This document shows, in pieces, positions 14,601-64,000 of a DNA stretch of 64,000 bases. A model generated the notes under the pieces. It had not been told where the DNA came from. It did not search any database and was given only the letters and a program-made list of their open reading frames with translations. The DNA lies in contig CM060732.1 of NCBI GenBank assembly GCA_030704615.1, positions 80,104,001-80,168,000 of the forward strand, read 5' to 3'. Position numbers and translations under genes: made by a program. This DNA is from Takakia lepidozioides (taxonomy: Eukaryota; Plantae; Bryophyta). How positions within the stretch are numbered: position 1 is the stretch's first letter; the number at the start of each line of letters is the position of its first letter.

Positions 14601-17600
14601 TATAACCATGCAATAGACTGCTTACTTTCTAGGCTGCCTGAACCTGTGGAGAATTGTGGAGCATGAAAATTTAACCATGCAATATGCTGCTTATTCCAGA
14701 CTTTGCTCGAAGGCCACCTAGCTACCATCCACATTTTATTTCTCCCCTTCCAACAGCCAAAGTAGGCCAAAGGTATCACCTGATGTATGGTAGAAAGTGT
14801 CAACCTGTCTGGCGGACTGAAAGATGCTAACGCTTGTCCAGCAGGGTTTCCTTTGGTATCCTCATCCCGTATAACAGCTGAATAACTGGATTCTCCCAGC
14901 TCATGTCCATGCAGTCTTAGAGCCACCTGATCCACAAATGCCCTGAGCCTCCCTATTGCAGACATCATAGAATCTTCTGAGCTCTTGGACGGAGCTGGAG
15001 ATGGAGGAGGGCACATGGCAGCGATTGCTGACTTGGTGGGTGGGCCAGGTCTCCTTCCTTTCCGCAGCTTCATGTCCATGTAGCTTCCAGGCTTGACTGA
15101 TTGGGTGCCTACCAATATAAGAGGTGAATTCCAGGAAAATTTGTATTTAATAAGTAGCATACCGGTCAGGGCTTATTTATTTTGCAATAACTGTCAACTT
15201 AATTTAAGCACTTCTGAACATTTTGCAACAGAAAAGTCCCAAAACCCACTTGTTAAATAGGCTCACATCAACTTGGTTGGATGAATTTGGTTGACCACTG
15301 CTTTGAAATGATATGGATTAAATAAGGTAATCATTGACAGGGTGACTCGTCAGTTCCAGCCAAGGGGCTGGTTTATAGGCTCCCAGTCAACAATCATGTA
15401 GTACATATTGTCGATCACAAGTGAGCTGTGTGCGCTATATCATAAAATCTACTAGATCCCCACGAGACAATCACAAATACATCATGTCATATCATCACTG
15501 TCTGCGCATGCACACATGTCATCCATGGATGATAGAAAGTTTGGACTACCGAGTTCTGCAAAAGATACGTCACGGAGTTTGAGACAATTGGAGGAAGCCT
15601 ATGCTGCAACTCACAGAAACCGTCATTTGCCGAGTAAGAAACTTCTAAAACAATTACTCTTCCTGAGAACCAAAGTGTCAAATCATTCATGCAAATATTG
15701 GATACATCACTGTTGCACACACCTTTTCCTTTTTGCAGCGACAAATGATTGATTACTCAGAGCCACATAGTAGTTCAAACAATAGAAAATAATGGCCAGT
15801 GTGAGTCCAAAGGTCTTACCAGGAGGCATGGCTACAGTGCGATCTCTCTTCTCCTTAGCCACAATGTCTGCATCAAACATTGCAGCCTCTTTCAACAAAG
15901 CTTTGATACCTGCAAATTCATAACCTCCACCATCACCTTGACCCTGCCATCTCAGCCTCTGCCCCACATTTAACTTTCCCCCAGAAGTAGCCTTTGAGCA
16001 CTCGAGCAAACTGCCATGATCCCTCCCTGCCTGCTTATCTCTGTATCCTTCACGGTATGGAGCAATCTGCTGGAGAATATTCCTCACTATGTCCCTCATG
16101 TCCAGGTTCTTAAACACCTCGTCTCTGGCAGCTGAAACAATTCGAAGCATAGTGTGCATGCCCCCCAGGACTTGTTGCTGTTCAGCATCAGAATTGTGAG
16201 AACCTTCCATAGTGGTTCCAATCAGGTTGAGCTCTTCACAGATCAGTAGGCCTAGAAGATGTGAACGTGTGCATTTGATGGCCTGCACATAGCATGCTAT
16301 TCAACTGCTGAGATCAACCAATAGGAGGGACAAGAATTACTGTAGTTGGACCATCAGAGATGGAACACATATAGTACAGTAACAGAAGCAAACATTGACA
16401 CAACGAAAGTGTCCATCCATGATAGGACTTACAGACATTGTCTCAACCAAACATGGCAATGTGCTTGCCTGTAGTAAAGGCATGCCCTTACTGAGCTGAA
16501 GGTGCCTCAGGCATGCAGAGATGGTTGGTCCAGGGGTCTGGCAAACCAGATTCATCAGCTGCTGACAGGCATAATCATCACCTTCGGTTACAACTAACCG
16601 CAAGACGGCAATGACATCATCAAATGCTCCCCCCGTAGTATCGCATCCCTTCCCTGGATCCAAACCCCATTCTGATTGGCCATTCCCTTGAGGGAACCCC
16701 CCACTCCCTTTTATCTCACATGCAAGTCCCCTGGCCGTCAAGTTATGAAGAAGCTCTAGTCCCACTCGCTGCAAACGGTACAGAATCACTATGTCGTGTA
16801 ATGGAATGCCTTGGTTCTGAACAGAGGTTATGAAATCTATAACAGCAGCTGCCTCACACTGCTCATTCCTGCATTCACAGACCCTGATAAGAGCTCCTGT
16901 TGGGGCCAAAGTCCTAATGCTTTTTGCCATCCGGTGTTGGTTGCGGTTAATCACACGCCGTGCAGCTGCTACAATTGCCCCCGTGCTACGAAAATTCTGC
17001 TCCAGCTTCACCAACATGGAATCTGGAAACTTGCCCTGAAACCGATGTAGGTTGTGGATGCCAGCGGCCCCCCGCCACGAGTAGATTTGTTGGTCATCAT
17101 CTCCCACAATTGTCAGACATTTGTGAGGCCCACACAGCAGATGGAGGAGTTCAAATTGTGCAGTGTCTGTGTCCTGGAACTCATCCACTAAATAAAGTGT
17201 TATTTGAGAGAATTTCAAAAGACAGGAACAACGTTCACACCATTTTGAGCCAACCGTAAGGAATCCATGATCAATCATCATGGACCGTTGGAAGAAAATT
17301 AGACCTTATCAACGAGTGAGATGATGTATTCAGTGAACATTCTCGTGTGTGATGTGACCTTAAGGGCATAGTTCCAGCTCTCAGGGAGCCATCGTGGGGT
17401 TTTAGCGCACCGGATATGAACCCAGCCTGAAGTGGCCATAGTGATTGCGCACACTCTATCACACATGTGCCTGTGGTTGCACTGCCAGTCAAACTAGAGT
17501 AAGGCATCTATGGAGAGAGAGGTAAGCTACCTACCTAAGACAAATTGGGCCTGCAATCCAACGGTCTGCAACACCGCAGGAGATCCTCGCAGTAGTCTGA

Positions 17601-44568: not shown

Positions 44569-46764
44569 CTAGCAGTCATGGGCGAAAGGCCCGGGAGTTC
44601 CAGTCCAACCTTCAACACACTTGAGGAGAGGAGTCACAAGTTTTCCCTCTGAGATGGCCTCATACACCTTCTCAATCTCTTGGCCAGGAGACACACTTCT
44701 CAACCCTGACAACAACTGGGTGCCCAACTCTGACCGCACAAACTTGTAGAGAGGGTAAGTTCTGCACTCCTCAATCCGGTTAGGTACCGGGGAGTATCCC
44801 TTGTTATCGTAGGCCTCACGGACTAGAGGTACCTTAGCATTCAGGCATGTCGTCAACTCCTCTTCAAAGGCAGAAATCCTGTGGAACACAGAGGTGGATT
44901 CCAATTTCTCGTTCTTGGGGTTTTGAAGAGCGTGTTGCACCAGCACTTCCCTCAACTTTTGCATCAGGGGGTAAGATAGACTTGTTGCATCGTCGATGTA
45001 GCTGAAAACAGGTTGGCAATTCACCACGCGCAACAGATCTTTCTCGCAGAACCGTGCTGGCAAAAAGGCACCGTTACTGCTTGTGAAGAGCGTCTTCTTA
45101 GCAACCTGGGAAACAATTTGTCTGACTGTCGTCTGCATTGTCTCCTCGATGTGACGAAGGTCGATGGCCTGGCACAGACCTACCAAGAATGTGGAGCTCA
45201 TGAGCTTAAGAATCTCAATAGATTCCTCAGTCTTGCGGGCGGACACCAATCCCAGCGAGTTCACATCCTGGTTGTGCTGCTCAGCACTTTGTACATGGGT
45301 GGTCACTGGGTTGGCCAAGTAGTTCAGTTCTGAGAGGTAGGAAGCCATGGCTATCTCCCCTCCCTTCATGCCATAGTCCAGGCTGGGGTTAGGTCCTCCG
45401 CTCAGGTTTGAGGGCAACCCATTGTTGTAGTAGTCGTTGACTAGCTCAGAGAACTGTGCAAACATGAGCTTCCCAATCGCAGCGATGGCCAACCGCATGT
45501 TGTCCATGGAGACTCCAATCGGGGTTCCCTGGAAGTTTCCGCCGTGAAGGGCTCTGTCCCCGGCAGCGTCGATGATGGGGTTATCGTTCACAGAGTTGAT
45601 TTCTCTTTGAATGGCGTGTGTGGCATTGCGAATTACCTCCACCTGCGGCCCCAGCCATTGTGGGGAAGTACGCAGCGCATATCGATCCTGCTTGGGTTTC
45701 GTCAATGGGTCAGTCTCATGCAGCTGTGCAGCTGCCTTCATGTAGGAGCTTCCATCGAGCACCCACTCCATAATCGCAGCCGCCTCCATCTGGCCTGGGT
45801 GGTGCTTTAGTTTGTGCGTCAGCGGATCAGCGAACTCGGGCTTCCCTTGCATCACTTCGCAGAACAGCGCAGACAGAACTTCAGCGAGTAGCACCATCAC
45901 ATTGGCATCAAAGCAGACGGTGGAAGCCAAGGCTGACCCCACCGCTGTTCCGTTGACGATGGCCAGGCCTTCCTTGGGCTGCAATTCAAACGGTTTCTCG
46001 ACCCCAGCGAGTCGTAGAGCTTCCAAGGCAGACACCTCCTTCCCGTCGCCAGTCACGGCTCTGGAGTTGGGTCTATTCGTAAGTAGTCCCGCGATGTAAG
46101 ACAAAGGAACAAGGTCTCCCGAAGCAGTAACGGTCCCTCGCAGTGGCAACTTGGGTGTGACATTTGCATTTAGAAGCTTTTCCATGGCTTCCAGAATCTC
46201 CCACCGAATTCCTGAGTATCCCTGCATCAATGTATTGGTGCGCACAAGCATGGCTGCCCGCGTGGTGCACGTCGGGAGGGTGTTGCTATTGCCCTTACCG
46301 AGGACTCCCGCATTCAGAAACCTAATTAGCTCTCTCTGGAGCTCCACTCCTTGCTGTGTACGCCGGTGAGAGGTGGCTCCAAAACCAGTTGTGACGCCAT
46401 AGATATCACCCCCGTTCATGATCTTCTGGAGAACCCAGTTGGAGCTTTCATCTACTCGATTCTTGGCATTGGCGGCATCCAGCAACACTCTCACTTCTGG
46501 TCGGCGGGCCACGGCTGCCACCTGACCTACCGTCAAAGTCACCCCTTCAATGGCTACTTCAGTTGCCTCGTAAAATGTCTTCACCATATCTTTAACCTCG
46601 TCCAAATGGCTGCTTCTCATGGCTGCCGCTGCTCTCGCCCAGTTTAGAGGGTCCGCAACCTGGACGTGAGCAGAACAAAAAGAATCATCTCCAGTATGGT
46701 AGTGCAGGGATTTCGCTGCATTTCCGTTCATGGTCACCTGAGCTTCGTGGGCCATCTGCACCAT
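44569..46764 (-). CDS. PAL: Phenylalanine ammonia-lyase, intronless
   Basis: [29 protein letters not shown] (Phe at the specificity position), MIO motif [21 protein letters not shown] and [11 protein letters not shown]. The first ATG is at 46764, with an alternative at 46755. Confidence 0.97.
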
Positions 46765-48671: not shown

Positions 48672-49280
48672 TCAATATGGATCCATATCGTTGGTGAGAT
48701 TCATGGTCGCTCTTAGCTGCCGCAGACGAAATAGCTTTTCATGGATAGATAGTTCTTCCCCCGAGGCATTGTGTGTGGCCATGCCAGCCTGGACCTTCAT
48801 ATGATACGCAGCTTTCTTCTTGGGGCTGACAGGCTGAGGTATCAGACCAGCCTTCTTTTGAGTTGATGCAGCAGCCTGAGATATGCCTGTAGTAAAATCA
48901 GGTTCTGCAACTGGTACGACATCACCATGCATGCCTCTGCGTCTTTTGCGCAATTGTCCACCCAAAGTGAACGTGAATTTCTCGCAATGTCCACTCTGAC
49001 ATATATAGCGAGGTTGACCTTTCGCCCCATTGTTGAAATACAGGAATTTGATCTTATCCGAGAAACAACGCGGGCAACACTTATCACCTGAGTGGTCCGT
49101 AGAGGTACTTGGAAGCTGGGTGTCTTCAGGCTCTCTCCTTCGTGTCCTTCGATTTGTCGTTTCTCGACCAGAACCGGTCACTGATCCTTTGCGCTCCAGA
49201 ACATACTCCGAAAAATCGGTCTCGCCCACCTGGTGGCCGTAGTATCCATGTCCAGTATCGCAAACCCTCCCGCGAGTCAT
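48672..49280 (-). CDS. Divergent Dof-type zinc-finger protein
   Basis: CPRCFSDKIKFLYFNNGAKGQPRYICQSGHCEKFTFTLGGQLR aligns to the Dof consensus CPRCxSxxTKFCYYNNYxxxQPRxFCxxCxRYWTxGGxLR. The first in-frame ATG is at 49280. Confidence 0.75.
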   Translation of the reverse strand: MTRGRVCDTGHGYYGHQVGETDFSEYVLERKGSVTGSGRETTNRRTRRREPEDTQLPSTSTDHSGDKCCPRCFSDKIKFLYFNNGAKGQPRYICQSGHCEKFTFTLGGQLRKRRRGMHGDVVPVAEPDFTTGISQAAASTQKKAGLIPQPVSPKKKAAYHMKVQAGMATHNASGEELSIHEKLFRLRQLRATMNLTNDMDPY

Positions 49281-49874
49281 AATATTCAGCACGACTCTGG
49301 GATCCAATCAATTGTTTGATTCTACAGTGCAACAGTCCCTTCAGAAGTAGACAGAGATGTCTGCTAGTTGCAAGAAGCTGGATAAGATTATGAAAGAGAG
49401 ACGATCTCGCGGATCTTAGAGTGCAACAGCACAACAATCGCGTACATATACATAGAGGAAAAAAGAAAGGCTCCTTCTTTCTCATCACCTATTTCGGGGT
49501 TTCCGTTCCTATTTTCAGATAAAAGAAAAAAAAAAGTTAGAAAAATAACCCTTTTGGGGCCGCTTTCTCAGCACGTTTCGCAGCAGAAACAGAAAAACAG
49601 ACCAAAAACAAATAGACACTGCCTTTAAGTAGTGTAGATTGAATTGTAGTGAACATCTGCCCAGAAGATTCTCACCACCATTCCTACATGCATCGAAGAG
49701 CGAAGACAACCCACAATCGTAGTCTACCAGTTTGTATTGAGTAATTCGTGTTCAATTGAAAGACTCTAGACTGCCTTGCAAGCTCAAAGAGAGATTTGAA
49801 ATCATGCAGACTCCCACATGACAACGTATGGAACACTCGCTGAATCCATTGTTGATTGTTTCCAGGTAGGACAG

Positions 49875-50196: not shown

Positions 50197-51420
50197 TCTC
50201 ACATTCCATCAGCTGCAGGTGCACAATGAAGGGTAGAACATGGAACACTTATCTAAATACAATCATCTACAGGGTTTCCGCCATATACAGAGCGTTCACA
50301 ACCGCTCCAATGTTAGTATCACAACCTTTCAATTTGGGCTGTCCAAATACTGCAAAGCAGTGGGACAATTGCCCCTTAAGGCCTCAAAGCGCTATACATC
50401 AAAAAGTGTCTGTATCTCATTTCTCTCCCTTGAACAATCGTCAATTGAAAGGGAGGTAGAAATCACTGCCAGTGCCACAGCAAGAACGATAATACTCGTC
50501 ACTCAGTCAGCTTTGTTGTTGTGTATATCACTACAAGACAATCTGTTGTCGGGCACCAGTGGCAACTGGGTGGAGGTGATACAACTGTTTTTGAGATGAT
50601 CTCAACATACGAGTTCAACAGTCCCATTCGGACAGCACAGCTTTGTCATATGACTTTGAAAAAAAGAAGTTTCAGTGCATGTACTCAAAACCTAATTTGC
50701 TAGGCTACGTGTACTCCTCAATGTGTCAGGTGTGGGGTGAGCCCACCAAGAAAGAATATCATTCTCAAACCAATTGCCATGCTCATGCACAGCACGTAAC
50801 TATCGAGGGAGAGAATGTACTCATAACACATTGTTGCAGTAGCTTTGCGGACATAAACCCCAAGCCCAGATTCGGCAACAGACACTGCCTTTGTGAAGAG
50901 CTCACTCCAGTAGTGGGACTTACCGTGAGGTAAACAACAAACACCAATTATACGAGAGAGTAGAATGTACCAATGAGACATTTGCAGTTGCAGCAATGTT
51001 CCAGAGAGAAAGAGAGAGAATATACTCATGAGGCGTTGTTGCCATCGTAGCCTTGTTGTGGCCCAAGTGTTAAGCATGCAACTGCCCGCTTGAGTGGAGG
51101 GGCTGCCCCCAAGCAGTAGGGATCCGCGTGTTACCATTCAGAGACCATCACTCCATAGGAGCTGCAGGGAATGGCCTGTGTAGGCATATCCTAAAGAAGG
51201 AGACCCCTTCTCTCCAACTAAATCAAATGTACTACCTTTACTCAAAGCAATCTGGCATGTAGGGGAGGGGTCACAAGGCTGGTCTTGCTTCACAGAGACG
51301 TTAAACATCTACTCCCATGGGCAGGGACAGCGAGAGACAGAAAGGATCAGACCAAAGAACTTACATTTTACAAGCTTAACAATTTAAGTGTAAACAAGAC
51401 CATTGGTTCTTACATGCTTC

Positions 51421-54400
51421 TCAATAGTAGATGAGGGGTGGCATCTTTTTCGGTTTGGTCTTTTGGACAGTGTTGCATGTTGGGCACTTCTTGCTCTTTT
51501 TGAGCTTAGTCCAGATATTATGGGAACATGGATAGCAGACATTGCAATGCTTGCACTCTTCATAAAGAGCACGAAACCTTGTTTTGTCGAAAGCCTCAAA
51601 GCAGACAATGCACGTCAATTGACTTTCATCCAGCTGTTGGATATGAGATTCCTGCACCAGAAGCCACAACTTTGTTAGAAAGACTGCACCTACTTTCTTA
51701 GGACCGGGAAGGCGATGCATTAAATCGACATTAGTGCCTCCTCAAACTGTAATTGTGCTTCTCCCTGTTCACAGTGGCACTTTCAATGGTTACCAACATT
51801 TCGGTGGTGCAGTTCTTCCCCTACATACTATAAATTCCGTGAGATAAAATTAAGGGATCACATAGCATATTCTCCACAACAAGCCTATGTAATGTACACC
51901 ATGCAGTGCGGCCACAGGCATCTCTTGGAAGCTCTCATAGCAACATCTACATGCATATATGCATCATGTAAAGAACGAGAATCCTGCTGCATTACTCTAC
52001 ATGGTGAAGATCTCTTTTCCCCTCAGCCCTATCTCAATGGAACAAAGCTAATGCCCTCAATCCTTGCTGATGAGCAATTCAAAGTAGTTCTGAATGAGCC
52101 CCTTGAAATACCAATGTACTCAGCCTACGAGTCAATGTAACAACAGACAGATACTTAGGACATCCATGCATACATCACACACTTATACCTGCTCAGATTC
52201 TTGTTTCCGGCGGAGAGTTTCCGCCATGGCATCCTTGGCTTCTTTCTTCAGGGCTTCTTGCTGCGTCAATTGACTTTGAAGCAGCTCCTCTCTTTCCCTC
52301 TGCTTCTCAGTCTTCAACTGGCGCAGTGCAACAGAAATAAGTTACATACTTACCAGAACACACTGGAATGAGCATCGATCCCCTACCTGACACTTGAGGC
52401 CTAGTGTTTGTTTGGGAGCCACCAACCTTCATAATCTCTCCTTGCTGTTGTTCCTCGAGTTTTTTCTCCATGGCCTGCTTCTTCTCCTCCAGCTTTTGAA
52501 GCCTATCCTCAATAGCTGCCCGTAACTCTGAGTCCTGCTTCATTTGTTCCATGGCAAGCACTTGCCGCTGCTGTGCTAGTTTTTTCCTGGCAGAGCATTC
52601 CATTGTGTTAGATGCTGAAATTGGGGTCTACTTCCTGTTACGAACCAAAGCTTGCCAGTAGAGAGAACTGTACTTCTCTGCTGCCCTGTACATTAGGAGA
52701 GTAGAGTGTTGAGGCTGCTCATTCTTGGCAAAGGTATGAAGCTAGATCAGGCCACTACCTGAAGCACTCCCTCTTTGAGCAGAGATTTACAGCTGGAGGA
52801 GTTTGCTGATGTTTCTTTGTTTGTTACGAGGTTTATCCCATAAGCACTTCAGGCTTCCTCTGGACGTCGTAAGGTCCCTTCCTGTTTTCCTTTCTCTCTC
52901 TGTTTAAAGTACCGCTTCATTTCTGCTTTTCCCCTTAGATTTCCAAAATTATGCATGATCTATAATAATCTGGTTGCAGGGATCAAAATTTTATTTACAA
53001 GAGCTGTTGAGATCATACTAGAAAGCATAATATTGATTCAAGCATGGATCTTGTACCCGCTTATCTTTAAAACTGCAGCAAGTTTGACCATACTGTGGGT
53101 TTTGTGTAACTTACTGGTGATTTTCTAACTTTTGATTGATGCCCTCTTGCAGCTTGCTGACCTCCTTGGCCTGGACCAGGCTCTCCTCTTCCAATTTAGC
53201 TTTATACTCCTCCAGTTTCATTCGGACCGCCTCCTCTTTCTTCCGAGCCTCATGTTTTCGGGAGGAAATCTCTTGCCTGATGCTGGTTCTCCTCAGAATC
53301 AGCTGTTCCCAGATCTCCCATCACAGAAGTTGTCAATGAGCATGGCTTTACTAAGGTGCCCACCAAGTTACAGACCACAGACTGCTTTAAAACGAAAAAA
53401 GGAGTTTTGTAGTTGTCTATCGCATACAGATGCTTCTCAAAATGTATGCTTACGTCTTCTTTGTGTTTGTTTTGAGCCTTCTGCTCACGCTGTTTGCCAA
53501 CTTCAATCTCTTGGTCAATTGATTTGACCTTCTCACTCCACTCGCCGAAGCCACTGCGATTGACCTCAAGCTTTTGAGCTTGCTGCAGTTTTTCTCTTTC
53601 CAGTTCCATCAGCCTTGCCTGTGCCTCTTCTCTGACCTGCATGCATGCAATCTGTTAATACCTCTGAAATGTCCAGCACTAGGCCTTGTTCACAAAGGAT
53701 CAATAACAGACAAGAAATCAAAAGAGGAATGACCCCCACCTTTTGCCGTTGCTTTTTCGGGATTACGACTTTTTCATTATAGCTCTCAATTGACCACCGC
53801 TTGACAATCTTCCGATTAGGATCAATCTCCCGCATGTCCACTGGCGATGCAAGATACCCATATAGAATTCGTTTGCCATCCGCAGCCACCAGGTTGGGGG
53901 TGTCCCACCCTTGCATTGTCCACAGGTTCCTACCAGGGGGCTTCACCTGCACGAAGTCACATGGAGAGAAGAAAATGCCTGTCAGAACCAATGTAACTCA
54001 AAGCCCAAAGGAGGTCAAATCCTCTTCTGAGAGAATGCAGCGATTGGAGGGGGAAGCTGAGAGAATCGAGTTGTGATCGAGAGAGTGTTACTGGAAGGCA
54101 GAGATTATTATCAACCGAAGAAACACAGGATAATTGCAGAAAAGAGGATGATGCGCCATCCAAGGCAAGGGTAATGAAGTTCATGTGTGTGCGCATGTGA
54201 GACATACAGAGGAATAGCCTTACTTCAAGCCACGTCTGTCTCCCTCGACCATTTCGCTCCAACCGAGTGCTCAGATTTTCAGCATCCAGATACCCTTCGT
54301 CTGTTGATGGAAATGTCACAATACTTTTTCCTCTATGCCCATGTGGCCCATACAAACATAGGACCCGGCCGTAGTCCTGATCCTTCATGCTCTTAAGAAA

Positions 54401-55393
54401 ATGGCGAATCTCGTCATTCTCCAACCCCTTCCACTTCTTGCTCTCCTCATCAAATATCACCCGTGTGTTTTCAATGATTACTACTGGCGGCCAGGCAATT
54501 GACTTGTCCACAAACATTGTAGTTGCACCTGGACCTGGAAGAGCAGCCTTGATATCGCCAGCTCTCTCATCTTCCAATTTCCTTGGAGGGCATTGTACCT
54601 CCATCTCCCTGTAAGGTGAGAATCTTTGAGCATCCTTGGATAGAGATCTTTGCTTAGCCTTTCCATAATCCCCCTTGTCTCTCTCCCTTGAAGACGTTAC
54701 CTCCTGTCGTCCCGGGGGAGAGCAACTCCTATTTTTCTGTCTCGAATGCCTGCCCGGCTCACTTTGTGGCTCTGTTTCTCGCTGCGTGGAGTGCTTGCTC
54801 ATAGAGTCCCATTCCGACCCCTTGTCTCTCTGCCTTGAAGACCTTACCTCCTGTCGTCCTCGAGGAGAGCAACTCCTATTTTTCTGTCTCGAATGCCTGC
54901 CCAGCTCACTATGTGGCTCTGCTTCTCGCTGCCTGGAGTGCCTGCGCTTAGAGTCCCATTCCGCTCCCTTGTCACTCTCCCTTGAAGGCGCTACCTCCTC
55001 TCGCCCTCGTGGAGAGCAACTCCTATTTCTCTGCCTCGAATACCTGCCCAGCTGACTTTGTGGCTCTCTTTCTCGCTCCCTGGAGTGCCTGCGCTTAGAG
55101 TCCCATTCCGATCCCCTGTCACTCTCCCTTGAAGGCCCCACCTCCTCTCGCCCTCGTGGAGAGCAACTCCAATTTCTCTGCCTCGAATACCTGCCCAGCT
55201 GACTTTGTGGCTCTGTTTCTCGCTCCCTGGAGCGCCTGCGCTTAGAGTCCCGTTCCGCTGAAACATCCCTAGGGCGTTTGCGACCATACTTGTCATTTCT
55301 GAAGAGGTCCCTCTCTTCCTCCCTCCGTTCTTTCCTTAAGACAACGCTCTGTTCACCCCTCTCCTCCGCCGCAATTTTCAACGAAGACTGCAT
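51421..55393 (-). CDS. RS-repeat + SGS3-type XS domain + coiled coil + C-terminal C3HC4 RING protein
   Basis: Phase-compatible GT-AG exons at ~55393-54224, 53946-53740, 53636-53454, 53303-53115, 52587-52427, 52317-52189 and 51651-51421. XS motifs: WPPVVIIENT, YGPHGHRG, GYLDAE, RILYGYLA. RING: CIVC-x15-CKH-x3-CYPC-x13-CPTC. Confidence 0.85.
54672..55258 (-). repeat. Four coding tandem repeats of 147 bp (49 aa, Arg/Ser/Glu-rich)
   Basis: gagcaactcc recurs at ~54720, 54867, 55014 and 55161. The unit reads DSKRRHSRERE.EPQSQLGR.SRQ.NRSCSPRGR.EV..SRE.DKG.EW. Confidence 0.92.
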
Positions 55394-55897
55394 TGAACTC
55401 ACCTGAAAATATCGAATTGCATTGACCAAGACACAAACACGGGATTACAACGGTAGGCTACTCAGAACCTCTGATTCTATGCTCCAGCACAGCGTGTAAG
55501 TAAACGTAGCTCAAAAACCTCGTCAAACGCTACCGAAAAGAAGACAGAGAATCACCTGCGTTGCGACTGAGGAACGCTACCGTAAGAACTGAGATAATAT
55601 AATGACAGCAACACAACCGAGGAAGACAAGTCCCAGAGAGAGCGCGAGATCGCAAGAGAGAAACACGGGCCTTGTATTGTTGGCGAGACGAGCTTTCCCT
55701 TCGGTGGGACCGTGAGCCTCTACAGACCTAATACGGTGTCACTACTGCTGAAACCCGAGAAAAACCCTCTTGATTATGTTAGTACGGTGGAAACGTCACC
55801 CCTTCAAGGCGGCTACACGACGACAAAAATGCGGCGGGCCGTCTATATTTTTTCATCTAGTGGATGGATGGACGTTTGGTTCTTTGAAAATCACTGA

Positions 55898-56680
55898 TTC
55901 AATCGGCTATTTCCTTTGTAGTTTAAACGTGTAAACATTCCTCTGGATGAATTTCTGCGGACAGGAGCAAGGCATCCCCCAAAGTTGGATGTACATATGA
56001 CTTTCTACAGATGAAATTGTTGGCAGAAAGAGCAGATTGTAATTATAGTCCATGCAAGCCCTGCTGGCAAATTGTAATTATAAATTCAATCAGCTATTTT
56101 CTTTGAACATTTCTTTCTGGTTTGAACATTCTTCTGGATGAATTTCTGCGGACAGGAGCAAGGCATCCCCCAGAGTTGGATGTACTTATGCCTTTCTACA
56201 GATGAAATTGTTGGCATGAACAGAGAACGAGCAGATTGTAATTATAGTCCATGCAAGCCCTGCTGGCAAATTGTAATTATAAATTCAATCAGCTATTTTC
56301 TTTGAACATTTCTTTCTGGTTTGAACATTCTTCTGGATGAATTTCTGCGGACAGGAGCAAGGCATCCCCCAGAGTTGGATGTACTTATGCCTTTCTACAG
56401 ATGAAATTGTTGGCATGAACAGAGAACGAGCAGATTGTAATTATAGTCCATGCAAGCCCTGCTGGCAAATTGTAATTATAAATTCAATCAGCTATTTTCT
56501 TTGAACATTTCTTTCTGGTTTGAACATTCTTCTGGATGAATTTCTGCGGACAGGAGCAAGGCATCCCCCAGAGTTGGATGTACTTATGCCTTTCTACAGA
56601 TGAAATTGTTGGCATGAACAGAGAACGAGCAGATTGTAATTATAGTCCATGCAAGCCCTGCTGGCAAACTGTAATTATAA
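55898..56680. repeat. Tandem array of ~4 copies of a 199-bp unit
   Basis: ctggatgaatttctgcggacaggagcaaggcatcccc at 55943, 56134, 56333 and 56532. Copies 2-4 are essentially identical. Confidence 0.95.
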
Positions 56681-61130: not shown

Positions 61131-64000
61131 TCGCCCCCCTAGCTGGTAATTAGGTCCCTCTAACACCGGATAGCTGACAAGTATCAATCTCGATAAAATC
61201 ATCGTTTGGTCTTCAATCGCACATGTCCCAGTATCTAAAGTCAATAGATCAAGAGGCAGGGTGCAAAAGTAGCCCCATCGTTACTCGCCTTCCTGCAATC
61301 CATGATCTTCAATTAAGTATCCATGGCGTTGAGCTCCCATCAGCTAGACCTTGGATCACTTGTCAATTCCACCATTGTCATGCCCACTACCTATGTCCAA
61401 GGCATCGTGGACACAACCATTCTCCACTAGGAACCTCCTCAAGTGGCGGTGTCAAGCATCCCATGTGCCACCCCCTTGAGCATTTGTCACACACCAACAT
61501 GGTCGCGGCACCACCAGCATGCCCACATAGCATGCAACGCAACCGTGCAGGTACCACTGCAAGGTTGGGATCTATCCTCCTATCCACATGTGGAAGGTGA
61601 CATGGCGCACAATTGTGCACATGGTCCTTCCATACCATGCCATCTCGACCCTCCAGAATCAACACTCTTGAAGGCAACACCTCTCGGACCCTTAGAATCA
61701 CACGCCCTGCTGTGACATCCAAAGTCGTAGACGCTGTCTGCTGCAAATACACATAGTCCCCAGGGTGGAAACGCCAAACACCTGGCCGATATCCCCCTCC
61801 ACGTATAGTGGCGTATCTCAACGTGTCTCGGTGTTGGGCAATAGCAAGGTTCTCAAAAGCCATATGCATGACTCTCTTGAACAACTCTGCCCGCTGGGCA
61901 CATGCTTGTGTCCACACATCCGGATCATCAAGGTTGAGAACTAATGTAGTCTCTTTGCAAATAGATGCAGGCAAATTTGGCTCTCGGCCAAAGAGAAGGA
62001 AATACGGCGAGAACGAGGCAAGTGATGCTTGTTTGCTAAACCTGTAGCCCATGGCCAACCAAGGTAGCTGAACCCAATACTCCAACGATAGCCGAAACCC
62101 ATAATGGGTAAAGGATGCAATTTGTGGAGTAGGTGCATTGAAATAAGCACCATGCACCTTGCCACTAACTGTTGCACATCCGTGTGCATGCCCCGCCACC
62201 AGTACTGTCCTTGCAGCAAACTATGAGTGCGTCGCACCCCAAAATGTCCCAATTCCTCATGGGCATGGTGTACCAATGCGCTCGTTGTGTTGGATGAGGC
62301 ACAATCCTCATTCGTCCATCCTCCCATACTCGGAGTAGGTGAGTCCCCTCCCACTTGAACTTTTTGGCTCGTTGTAGGATCCGATCTCTCTCCTTAGCAG
62401 TCACACTGGCTGTTGTCTCTCCAGTACAAAGGTAGGCCAACACTGCTGCATCTTCATGTTCATCCTTAGCACCACCAAGCTCCTCACTGATCTCCGGATC
62501 GTCATGCACACCATCTACATGACCAATGTTATGGGATGGACCAGCTTGAGCTCCCATTGCTAGGATGCACAAAAAGGCAGATGCATGTCATCCTGGCACC
62601 ATCTCCTCATCCGTCTCACCATGCCACCGAGCTCCAGTATCATCATGCTCGCTCGTGCATGGATTATGACTCAATCCATCTGCATCCCGATTGACAATAC
62701 CGGCTCGATGTACCACCTGAAAGTCGTATTCTTGAAGCATAAGTGCCCACCGTGCAAGCTTCCCTGTAAGCTTGTCTGACTTCATCAACCACTTCAGTGG
62801 TTAGTGATCCGTGACAAGGGTGAAGAGATTGCCATAGAGGTAGCATCTGAGATGTGTCACTGCCCATACCGCAGCTAGACACTCCCCTTCATATGAACTA
62901 TACTTCGCCTCGGCATCATTGTTTGAGTGGCTAGCATATGCCACTACAAACTCTCTTCCCTCATCATCCATCTGTGTGAGCACTGCTCCAATCCCCAGCA
63001 TACTCCAATCCGTATGTAGTTGGAAAGGCTGCCCCCGAATAGGCCGCCTCAAAATAGGTGCAGAAGTCAATCGAGCCTTGAGTTCCTCAAAGGCTTCCTC
63101 CTGCTCCTCCTCCCACTGCCACTCCTGACCCACCTTGGTCAACTTAATAAGAGCCTTTGCAATGCTGCTAAATCCCTTGACAAACCGTCGATAGTAGTTT
63201 GCCAACCCCATGAAAGCACGAACTCTGCTAACATCTATGGAGCGTGGAATGCGTGCAATGGCCTCCACCTTCATCTTTTGAACACCCAATCCTCTAGGGT
63301 ATATCATGTGGCCCAGATACTCAATCTGGTTGTGGAAGAACTTGCACTTCCCAGGGTGCAATTTCAACCCATGCGCTCTCAAGCGCTCAAACACCACCTG
63401 AAGGTGTCTCTCATGCTCCTCAACCGTGGCACTAAAGACGATGATGTCATCAATGTAACACCGGGCAAAGTCTAGCCCCGCGAGAATCCTATCCATAACC
63501 CTCTGAAACTCTGCAGGAGCATTCTTCAACCCAAATGGTAGGAAGCGCCATCGGTACAAGCAATCTTTCCCATGTTGGTCAATTCTCCAGAATGTCGTCT
63601 TTTACTTGTCAGCCTCTTTGATTGGCAACTGGTGGTAACCGGATCGCAAGTCCAATGTGCTAAACACCTTCGCATGTCCAATGGCATCAAAGATTTCCTC
63701 TGGAGTTGGCATGGCATATCTATCGGACTTAGTCTGACGATTCACAGGACGATAGTCCCCATACATCCTTCTTTCTGTCCAATTGCCATAGATATCCTTC
63801 TTAGCTGACATCACCGTTGCCGAGGCATAATCCCCGCCTGACAACTCCACCAATCCAACTTCGAACAACTCCATAGTCCGTGACTGGATCAATGACCTCT
63901 CCATGTCACTATACCGGTAGGGCCTTCGAAAGATTGGCGTGTCATTTGTCAAATCAATACGAAACTCCTGGCCCTTCAAACTCCCCAAATCCTTCAAACC
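61045..64000 (-). mobile_element. Ty3/Gypsy element (RT, RNase H, deleted integrase, C-terminal PHD finger), runs off the window
   Basis: FSTLDLRSGYHQ, LPFGLKNAPAEFQ, CYIDDIIVF, LHTDWS, YEGECLAAVWAV and HEELGHFG motifs. PHD: CMLC...CDKCSRGWHMGCLTPPLEEVPSGEWLCPRC. Contains stops and frameshifts. Confidence 0.93.

What the first reader, a model, noticed from the sequence alone, without database searches (positions are those of the whole stretch)
51421..55393. Spliced gene fusing an SGS3-type XS RNA-binding domain to a C-terminal RING E3-ligase domain
Seen: seven phase-compatible exons with no stops link RS-rich repeats, an XS domain, a long coiled coil and a C3HC4 RING of the CxHxxxC (IAP/MGRN-like) type. 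Known: SGS3 (zf-XS, XS, coiled coil) and IDN2/FDM (zf-XS, XS, coiled coil, XH) bind dsRNA with 5' overhangs in silencing, and neither has a RING. No zf-XS is visible here. Inference: this may be a dsRNA-sensing ubiquitin ligase linking RNA silencing or antiviral sensing to protein degradation. I do not recognise it as a described family.
Basis: partly seen in the sequence, partly recalled or inferred. Interest (0 to 1): 0.88.

Follow-up and report, generated by a model that had tools for sequence, protein, structure and literature searches.

The report
Moss XS-domain RING ligase gene
This is a real, expressed seven-exon plant gene joining an SGS3-like RNA-binding (XS) domain through a long helix to a RING ubiquitin-ligase domain; it belongs to an unstudied family present from bryophytes to conifers and not found in flowering plants, which may be why nobody has characterised it.

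Summary
On the minus strand, 55393-51421, seven exons encode 755 residues. Transcript contigs from two independent studies show all six introns (GT..AG) and link the XS exons to the RING exon. Pfam finds XS (8.8e-16) and zf-C3HC4_3 RING (29.7 bits, cut-off 27). No zf-XS or XH occurs in the window.

The architecture is not unique. Collinear XS / long-helix / C-terminal-RING proteins exist in lycophytes (Diphasiastrum, Selaginella), ferns (Adiantum) and conifers, all annotated as hypothetical or misnamed. One 2018 paper notes the Selaginella protein in a single sentence.

In an XS tree these proteins, the window gene and RING-less liverwort relatives form one clade (97/93). It is separate from SGS3 and from a seed-plant XS-only clade, and it holds no angiosperm. 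One liverwort carries a frameshifted RING relic downstream, which suggests secondary loss.

All eight zinc ligands and the usual E2-contact residues are invariant. The XS of an orthologue folds like IDN2's. The reading as an RNA-guided, probably dimeric, E3 ligase is plausible but untested.

First-reader notes of this scan list three more XS-coil-RING loci elsewhere in this genome; I could not check them.

Exons were never joined; whole-protein tests used an orthologue.

The parts
55394..55646 (-). 5' UTR (minimum extent); unspliced; one 7-codon uORF starting at 55422
   Evidence: A contig of run X1 lies unbroken on 55185-55646, with some depth up to the 55592-55755 bin. There is an in-frame stop upstream of the ATG, and one uATG.
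54224..55393 (-). Exon 1 (390 codons): ATG, an R/S/E/D-rich disordered region, and the first ~90 residues of the XS domain
   Evidence: Open frame; donor GTAAGG; joint 53946/54224 in an X1 contig; Pfam XS 8.8e-16.
54671..55257 (-). Four tandem 147-nt (49-aa) repeats inside exon 1, each ending in a ...NRSCSP(R/P)GR... motif; lineage-specific N-terminal extension
   Evidence: TRF gives period 147, 4.0 copies, 91% matches. Peptide repeats are listed. Lycophyte and fern orthologues have no N-terminal extension.
54230..54508 (-). XS domain, N-terminal part (motifs WPPVVIIENT and GHRGKSIVTF)
   Evidence: Pfam PF03468 residues 296-388. 42% identity to the SGS3 XS. 57-59% identity to the nearest orthologues.
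53740..53946 (-). Exon 2 (69 codons): C-terminal part of the XS domain (ILYGYLA motif) and a conserved extension (WSIESYNEKV)
   Evidence: The XS HMM built here hits this block at 2.6e-15. It is 49-64% identical to orthologues. Joints on both sides appear in X1 contig 3.
53454..53636 (-). Exon 3 (61 codons): start of the long helix, including the conserved Gly-containing hinge
   Evidence: Joints 53636/53740 and 53302/53454. It aligns to P0003 residues about 175-235, where the AF2 helix breaks at 198-204.
53115..53302 (-). Exon 4 (62 codons + 2 nt): helix
   Evidence: Joints 53302/53454 and 52586/53115; phase check; collinear with orthologues.
52427..52586 (-). Exon 5 (1 nt + 53 codons): helix
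   Evidence: Covered whole by X1 contig 3 and X2 contig 7, so it is the overlap that chains the XS exons to the RING exon. 40-42% identical to orthologues.
52189..52317 (-). Exon 6 (43 codons): helix
   Evidence: Joints 52317/52427 and 51651/52189 in both runs.
51421..51651 (-). Exon 7 (76 codons + stop): RING finger and conserved C-terminal tail (K-x4-P-x2-I-Y-x-end)
   Evidence: Pfam zf-C3HC4_3 29.7 bits. The family RING profile against PDB gives RNF4 7.7e-7, TRIM32 7e-6 and MEX3C 1e-5. The AF2 model has pLDDT 80.6 and its structural neighbours are all RING E3 domains.
51475..51612 (-). RING core, from the first to the eighth zinc ligand
   Evidence: C14, C17, C33, H35, C39, C42, C56, C59 and W47, P57 are invariant in 11 family members.
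51193..51420 (-). 3' UTR (minimum extent)
   Evidence: Contigs lie on 51193-51374 and 51366-51650 with 0-1 differences.

Best explanation
This is an intact, transcribed member of a conserved land-plant family whose core is an XS domain, a helix of about 225 residues and a C-terminal RING.

Shown:
- The gene model and its expression.
- The two domains.
- Collinearity with orthologues.
- A separate XS clade.
- Intact zinc ligands and E2-contact residues.
- An IDN2-like XS fold in an orthologue.

Inferred mechanism:
- The XS head binds RNA, by analogy with SGS3 and IDN2, which bind double-stranded RNA with 5' overhangs.
- The long helix pairs two chains, as the coiled coils of SGS3 and IDN2 do. 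This brings two C-terminal RINGs together, as in RNF8, Rad18, Bre1 and TRIM ligases.
- The RING pair recruits an E2~ubiquitin and ubiquitinates proteins sitting on or near the bound RNA. That would make it a plant counterpart of animal RNA-binding RING ligases.
- The moss-specific R/S/E/D-rich 49-aa repeats are a disordered tail. They may serve localisation, condensation or phospho-regulation.

My odds: about 0.97 for gene, architecture and family; about 0.7 for an active E3; about 0.5 for RNA-dependent targeting.
For: Gene model: six GT..AG joints in contigs of two studies, with introns uncovered; phases checked.

Domains: Pfam XS 8.8e-16 and RING above the gathering score.

Family:
- Orthologues with XS and RING in Diphasiastrum, Selaginella, Adiantum and conifers.
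- All seven exons align collinearly with them.

Clade: 21 rows, support 97/93, apart from SGS3 (96/95) and the seed-plant XS-only clade (100/99).

Structure:
- AF2 of orthologue P0003 (pLDDT 81) gives XS 13-158, helices 159-197 and 205-385, and RING 390-447.
- The best PDB fold match is 4E8U, the IDN2 XS with adjacent coiled coil, E 2.7e-8, followed by RRMs.

RING:
- All 8 ligands, the I/V after C1, and W47 and P57 are invariant.
- Sequence and fold neighbours are active, mostly dimeric RING E3s, among them RNF4, TRIM32, TRIM25, RNF8, Rad18, RNF20 and the RNA-binding ligase MEX3C.
Against: - No biochemical data exist for any member.
- RNA binding is extrapolated from SGS3 and IDN2, which are 21-42% identical.
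- The residue after the last Cys (the 'linchpin' position of many active RINGs) is variable, and is N in the window.
- Heptad periodicity of the helix is only moderate, so a single stable helix rather than a dimeric coiled coil is possible.
- The RING homodimer prediction gave no verdict.
- Liverwort relatives do without the RING, so the XS part has a function of its own.
- The runs are labelled RNA only by guess. Continuity from XS to RING rests on overlapping contigs, not on one molecule.
Confidence: 0.6

Rival explanations
1. It is an SGS3-like scaffold rather than an enzyme. XS plus helix would organise RNA-protein bodies, and the RING would serve only as a zinc-stabilised dimerisation or docking module without E3 activity.
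For: - The linchpin position is not conserved.
- Liverwort relatives keep XS alone, so XS is functional without a RING.
- SGS3 itself works as a non-enzymatic partner of RDR6 (established knowledge).
Against: - All eight ligands and the three classic E2-contact positions (I/V, W, P) are invariant from moss to conifers. That is the pattern expected of a working E2-binding surface.
- The nearest solved RINGs are active ligases.
Confidence: 0.2
2. It is an active RING ligase whose XS domain no longer binds RNA. XS would instead serve as a protein-binding or oligomerisation domain, so the targets would be chosen by protein contacts.
For: - The XS is divergent. It gave no PDB hit by sequence and no hit in the word-based search.
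- It forms a clade of its own.
Against: - The signature XS motifs (WPP..I.EN, GH.G..V.F, LYGYLA) are kept, with 42% identity to the SGS3 XS.
- The fold matches IDN2 XS and then canonical RRMs.
Confidence: 0.15
3. It is a gene-model artefact: the RING exon would belong to another gene, or the locus would be a decaying duplicate.
For: - Contigs, not single reads, carry the joints.
- The runs are 'RNA?' by guess.
- The N-terminal repeats are young, at 91% identity.
Against: - X2 contig 7 joins E7-E6-E5, and X1 contig 3 joins E5-E4-E3-E2-E1.
- The frame is open throughout.
- The same order of parts is found in proteins of at least four plant lineages.
Confidence: 0.03

Closest known systems
SGS3 (SUPPRESSOR OF GENE SILENCING 3; zf-XS + XS + coiled coil)
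   Same: An XS domain of the same type (42% identity to Hibiscus SGS3), followed directly by a long helical region. Both are plant-specific.
   Different: - No zf-XS anywhere in the window.
- A C-terminal RING, which SGS3 lacks.
- Its XS falls in a separate clade (97/93 against 96/95).
IDN2 / FDM proteins (zf-XS + XS + coiled coil + XH)
   Same: The only solved XS structure (4E8U, XS plus coiled-coil start) is the best fold match of the orthologue model (E 2.7e-8).
   Different: - No zf-XS and no XH.
- A RING stands in place of XH.
Selaginella moellendorffii XS protein with C-terminal RING (XP_002979112, noted by Morozov et al. 2018, PMC5907777; current records XP_024525141.1 and XP_024519004.1)
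   Same: The same architecture and the same clade. P0034 and P0122 align over XS, helix and RING.
   Different: - The Selaginella proteins are 416 aa with no N-terminal extension; the window gene adds about 290 residues with four 49-aa repeats.
- None has been studied; the paper gives one sentence.
Animal RNA-binding RING ligases (MEX3C: KH + C-terminal RING; CNOT4: RING + RRM; TRIM25)
   Same: The same logic of an RNA-binding fold plus a RING. The MEX3C RING is among the best sequence and fold matches. CNOT4 (NOT4) also appears.
   Different: The RNA-binding domains are unrelated, the lineage is different and the domain order differs. This is analogy, not membership.
Coiled-coil RING ligases with paired RINGs (RNF8, Rad18, RNF20/40-Bre1, TRIM32/69)
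   Same: The RING model's nearest solved structures. A long helix runs directly into the RING.
   Different: Their substrate-binding heads (FHA, SAP and others) are unrelated. Dimerisation here is not shown (one search gave no verdict).

Membership tests
XS domain proteins (Pfam PF03468) | Match to the XS profile above the gathering score | tested here: met
   58.7 bits against a cut-off of 25, E 8.8e-16, on exon 1 alone. Exon 2 carries the rest.
XS domain proteins (Pfam PF03468) | RRM-like XS fold as in IDN2 (4E8U) | tested here: met
   Tested on orthologue P0003, not on the window protein, because the exons were not joined. 4E8U is the top hit at E 2.7e-8, prob 1.00.
XS domain proteins (Pfam PF03468) | Binds double-stranded RNA with 5' overhangs | not testable with these tools
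   Needs a binding assay.
SGS3 | zf-XS zinc finger upstream of XS | tested here: not met
   No zf-XS in the gene or anywhere in the window. All 15 SGS3-clade rows in the tree have one.
SGS3 | XS groups with SGS3 in a tree | tested here: not met
   The window lies in a separate clade, 97/93.
IDN2/FDM | C-terminal XH domain and N-terminal zf-XS | tested here: not met
   Pfam on every exon finds neither.
RING-type E3 ligases (zf-C3HC4_3, PF13920) | Profile match above the gathering score and eight correctly spaced zinc ligands | tested here: met
   29.7 bits against 27. The C3HC4 ligands are invariant across the family.
RING-type E3 ligases (zf-C3HC4_3, PF13920) | Hydrophobic E2-contact residues (after C1, the Trp in the helix, the Pro after C7) | tested here: met
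   I/V, W47 and P57 are conserved in all 11 rows. Their role is taken from established knowledge of c-Cbl and other RINGs.
RING-type E3 ligases (zf-C3HC4_3, PF13920) | Ubiquitin-ligase activity with an E2 | not testable with these tools
   Needs an in vitro ubiquitination assay.
RING-type E3 ligases (zf-C3HC4_3, PF13920) | RING homodimer | tested here: inconclusive
   Complex prediction on exon 7 x2 gave score 0.00, 'no answer'.
XS / helix / RING family of non-flowering land plants (unnamed) | Collinear XS, long helix, C-terminal RING and the K-x4-P-x2-I-Y tail | tested here: met
   All seven exons align in order to Diphasiastrum, Selaginella, Adiantum and conifer proteins.
XS / helix / RING family of non-flowering land plants (unnamed) | XS in the family's clade | tested here: met
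   Clade of 21 rows, ultrafast bootstrap 97 / SH-aLRT 93; SH-aLRT 95 in the 106-row tree.

The most novel reading that the evidence does not exclude
XS-helix-RING proteins are an ancient land-plant class of RNA-guided ubiquitin ligases. They would recognise the same kind of RNA as SGS3 (duplexes with 5' overhangs) but answer by ubiquitinating associated proteins, such as silencing factors, viral proteins or stalled RNPs. On this reading the class was lost in flowering plants and lost its ligase half in liverworts, so non-flowering plants would have a branch of RNA silencing or RNA surveillance that Arabidopsis cannot reveal.
Probability: 0.3. Interest if true: 0.7.

Novelty: new variant of a known kind. 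Interest (0 to 1): 0.48.

Why it matters
XS proteins (SGS3, IDN2/FDM) are central to plant siRNA amplification and RNA-directed DNA methylation, and none is known to be an enzyme. A third XS lineage wired to a ubiquitin-ligase domain would link RNA recognition to protein turnover. It is conserved across lineages that separated early in land-plant evolution, and it was not found in angiosperms.

Its distribution would explain why genetics in Arabidopsis and rice never found it. The family is testable in transformable non-flowering models. The practical result of this check is a verified gene model, a defined family with its phyletic range, and a list of misannotated database entries ('vicilin-like', 'SGS3 homolog', 'hypothetical').

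Tried and rejected
- Word-based homologue search with exon 1 (region 275-390): no hit. This is uninformative, because the 755-aa protein lies outside the tool's length range for a 390-aa query.
- Metagenome scan with the XS exon: 152 pattern matches, none confirmed.
- phmmer of the XS exon against PDB: only chance-level hits, and IDN2 was not found by sequence. The link came from the fold search.
- Protein atlas: the nearest cluster is 'XS domain-containing protein', score 0.86. This is a lead only.
- Complex prediction of exon 7 as a homodimer: score 0.00, no verdict. It counts neither for nor against dimerisation.
- RNF4-like C-terminal tail: I recalled that RNF4 ends in a similar P-I-Y motif used in dimeric RING activation. 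The profile alignment to RNF4 stopped before the tail, so this stays an untested recollection.
- Extra upstream coding exon or a hidden zf-XS: rejected. The 5' UTR contig is unspliced to at least 55646, there is an in-frame stop upstream, and no zf-XS occurs in the window.
- RING belonging to another gene: rejected.
- Marchantia locus look-up: not on record.
- Literature: no paper combines 'XS domain' with 'E3 ligase'. 'XS domain' with 'RING finger', PF03468, and 'XS domain-containing' with moss gave nothing relevant.
- There is therefore no whole-protein Pfam scan, fold or exact look-up of the window's own 755-aa product. The organism stayed coded; earlier notes call it a moss or bryophyte.
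Full report
**1. The observation**

The minus strand between 55393 and 51421 holds seven stop-free blocks. These can be joined through GT..AG introns with matching phases.

Contigs of two public runs from two studies (X1, X2, same coded organism) were laid on 51000-55900. They match the exons with 0-1 differences and skip exactly six stretches with CT..AC ends on the plus strand:
- 51652-52188
- 52318-52426
- 52587-53114
- 53303-53453
- 53637-53739
- 53947-54223

Depth in introns 4 and 6 is zero. So although the runs are labelled RNA only by guess, they behave as transcriptome assemblies.

The contigs chain the XS exons to the RING exon:
- X1 contig 3 carries E1 (40 nt)-E2-E3-E4-E5-E6 (20 nt).
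- X2 contig 7 carries E5-E6-E7.
- X1 contig 2 carries E6 (74 nt)-E7-3' UTR.

The one correction to a naive model is the E4 acceptor, which is 53302 rather than the in-frame AG at 53314. The coding sequence is 2268 nt, 755 codons plus the stop.

The 5' UTR is unspliced to at least 55646. It has an in-frame stop upstream of the ATG and a single 7-codon uORF.

**2. Domains**

Each exon was scanned on its own by reference. The exons were never joined, so there is no whole-protein scan of the window's own product.

- Exon 1 gives Pfam XS at 8.8e-16 (residues 296-388, profile positions 1-89 of 113). Exon 2 carries the remainder of the domain.
- Exon 7 gives zf-C3HC4_3 at 29.7 bits (cut-off 27) and zf-RING_2 just under its cut-off.
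- Exons 3-6 have no Pfam family. They contain no proline and are 50-63% charged residues plus Gln. Heptad hydrophobicity is moderate.
- The N-terminal 290 residues are R/S/E/D-rich and include four tandem 49-aa repeats encoded by 147-nt units at 91% identity.
- No zf-XS and no XH are present in the gene, and no zf-XS in the whole window.

**3. Relatives**

An exhaustive phmmer search with the XS part of exon 1 found 104 proteins, the best at 57% identity. Typing their architectures gave three kinds:
- zf-XS + XS, the SGS3 type. P0016 is annotated SGS3 of Hibiscus.
- A long N-terminal region with XS at the very end.
- XS + long helix + C-terminal RING.

Named members of the third kind are:
- Diphasiastrum complanatum KAJ7548047.1 and two paralogues.
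- Selaginella moellendorffii XP_024525141.1 ('vicilin-like seed storage protein') and XP_024519004.1 ('SGS3 homolog').
- Adiantum capillus-veneris and A. nelumboides hypothetical proteins.
- Cryptomeria japonica SUGI_0420560, whose gene model is cut inside the RING.
- A Ginkgo fragment.
- Many unlabelled transcriptome proteins of 480 or 640-700 aa that group with the ferns and the conifers.

The seven window exons align one after another along the full length of these proteins. The core of the family is about 450 residues. The N-terminal extension is lineage-specific: absent in lycophytes and ferns, and different in conifers.

**4. Phylogeny**

A careful IQ-TREE run on 49 XS domains (160 columns) gave three clades:
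- The window, all RING-bearing proteins and a group of liverwort proteins form one clade (ultrafast bootstrap 97, SH-aLRT 93).
- SGS3 forms a second clade (96/95).
- A seed-plant 'XS at the C-terminus' clade forms a third (100/99). It includes Panicum, Juncus, Aristolochia and a second Cryptomeria gene.

The 106-row quick tree agrees.

No angiosperm protein falls in the RING clade. Gymnosperms have both this clade and the XS-only clade, so the two are paralogous, and the RING clade appears to have been lost in flowering plants. No other moss protein turned up. I cannot tell whether that reflects real absence or the limits of the searches.

**5. Liverworts**

Marchantia, Riccia, Calypogeia and two transcriptome proteins have a long N-terminal region plus XS. 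They stop a few residues after the point where window exon 2 ends.

In the Calypogeia fissa genome (L003), a splice donor sits at that same point. About 3.3 kb downstream on the same strand lies a RING-homologous stretch (15004-15208). It scores E 1.8e-10 to window exon 7 and 4e-10 to the Diphasiastrum RING. It is split between two reading frames and preceded by E/K/Q-rich open pieces. Riccia shows nothing within 10 kb.

I read this as a relic. The helix-RING half is probably ancestral to the clade and was dropped in liverworts. An assembly error or an unannotated isoform is not excluded.

**6. Structure**

AlphaFold2 on Diphasiastrum P0003, using the family alignment, gave mean pLDDT 81. The model shows:
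- an alpha/beta XS domain, residues 13-158;
- a helix at 159-197;
- a short low-confidence hinge at a conserved Gly-containing spot;
- an unbroken helix at 205-385;
- a RING at 390-447.

Foldseek against the PDB puts the IDN2 XS domain with its coiled-coil start (4E8U) first, at E 2.7e-8 and prob 1.00, followed by canonical RRMs.

The window's own exon 7, folded with 10 orthologous RINGs, gave pLDDT 80.6. Its neighbours are all RING ligase domains: Rad18, TRIM69, Ring1b, RNF8, RNF20, TRIM32, TRIM25, IDOL, MEX3C, XIAP and cIAP2. TM-scores are 0.5-0.64, with weak E-values as expected for 76 residues.

A profile of the family's RING hits RNF4 (7.7e-7), TRIM32 (7e-6) and MEX3C (1e-5), then RNF38, MGRN1, MDM2 and the IAPs.

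All eight zinc ligands, the I/V after the first Cys, Trp47 and Pro57 are invariant from moss to conifer. So is a C-terminal tail, K-x4-P-x2-I-Y-x-end. The position after the last Cys varies.

**7. How it most likely works**

Shown:
- One transcription unit.
- An SGS3-type XS domain.
- A helix of about 225 residues.
- A RING with an intact zinc and E2-binding signature.
- Conservation across bryophytes, lycophytes, ferns and gymnosperms.

Inferred from established knowledge of SGS3/IDN2 and of coiled-coil RING ligases:
- XS binds RNA.
- The helix pairs two chains.
- The paired RINGs activate an E2~ubiquitin.
- Proteins on or near the bound RNA are ubiquitinated.

The dimer test gave no verdict, and the helix could be a single stable helix. 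The rival readings are a non-catalytic scaffold, and a ligase whose XS binds protein. They are scored in the report sections.

**8. What is known**

Searches of about 8.4 million papers found no work on an XS-RING protein. The exception is one sentence in Morozov et al. 2018 (PMC5907777). [quoted passage not shown]

The family is therefore seen but not described. Database names for it are generic or wrong.

First-reader notes of this scan list three further XS-coil-RING loci 9.3-9.7 Mb away on the same piece of this genome. I could not read them.

**9. Verdict**

- I rate the gene a new variant of a known kind: an XS protein with a ligase module, and an RNA-binding RING ligase of a plant-specific type.
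- Interest is moderate. The value lies in a clean, expressed gene model, a defined phyletic range with apparent loss in angiosperms, and direct testability.

Noticed in passing
same genome, 9.3-9.7 Mb before this window (notes s1-488619, s1-479821, s1-481975): Three more first-reader notes describe XS + coiled coil + RING loci, so this genome probably holds a small paralogue family. These are unchecked notes; I could not read the DNA.
   Followed up: no
L003:14296-15208 (Calypogeia fissa, GCA_965154635.1): Downstream of the RING-less liverwort XS gene lies a RING-homologous stretch split over two frames, preceded by E/K/Q-rich open pieces. It is likely a relic of a lost helix-RING half. Riccia (L004) has none within 10 kb.
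   Followed up: partly
window 55934-56680: A 199-bp tandem repeat, 3.8 copies at 97% identity, starts about 200-300 bp beyond the last transcript coverage at the gene's 5' end. Any role in the promoter is unknown.
   Followed up: partly
window 54034-54213 (intron 1): Both runs hold contigs that match this intronic stretch with 14 differences and 2 gaps, and run on into unrelated sequence on both sides. It is a repeat transcribed from another locus, not retained intron.
   Followed up: no
window 44572-46764 (-): An intronless open frame for phenylalanine/aromatic ammonia-lyase (Pfam Lyase_aromatic, 2.5e-146).
   Followed up: partly
window 48675-49307 (-): A 211-aa open frame with a Dof-type zinc finger (Pfam 7.3e-12). 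Whether it is a complete gene was not examined.
   Followed up: partly
window 61390-62199 (-): A retrotransposon integrase-like open frame ends in a PHD finger (Pfam 2.4e-11) where many plant Ty3/Gypsy elements carry a chromodomain. It sits next to the element noted earlier at 62588-64000.
   Followed up: partly
public records XP_024525141.1, XP_024519004.1 (Selaginella); SUGI_0420560 (Cryptomeria): Two allelic or paralogous Selaginella XS-RING proteins carry unrelated automatic names ('vicilin-like seed storage protein', 'SGS3 homolog'). The Cryptomeria model ends in the middle of the RING, so it is probably a truncated gene model.
   Followed up: partly
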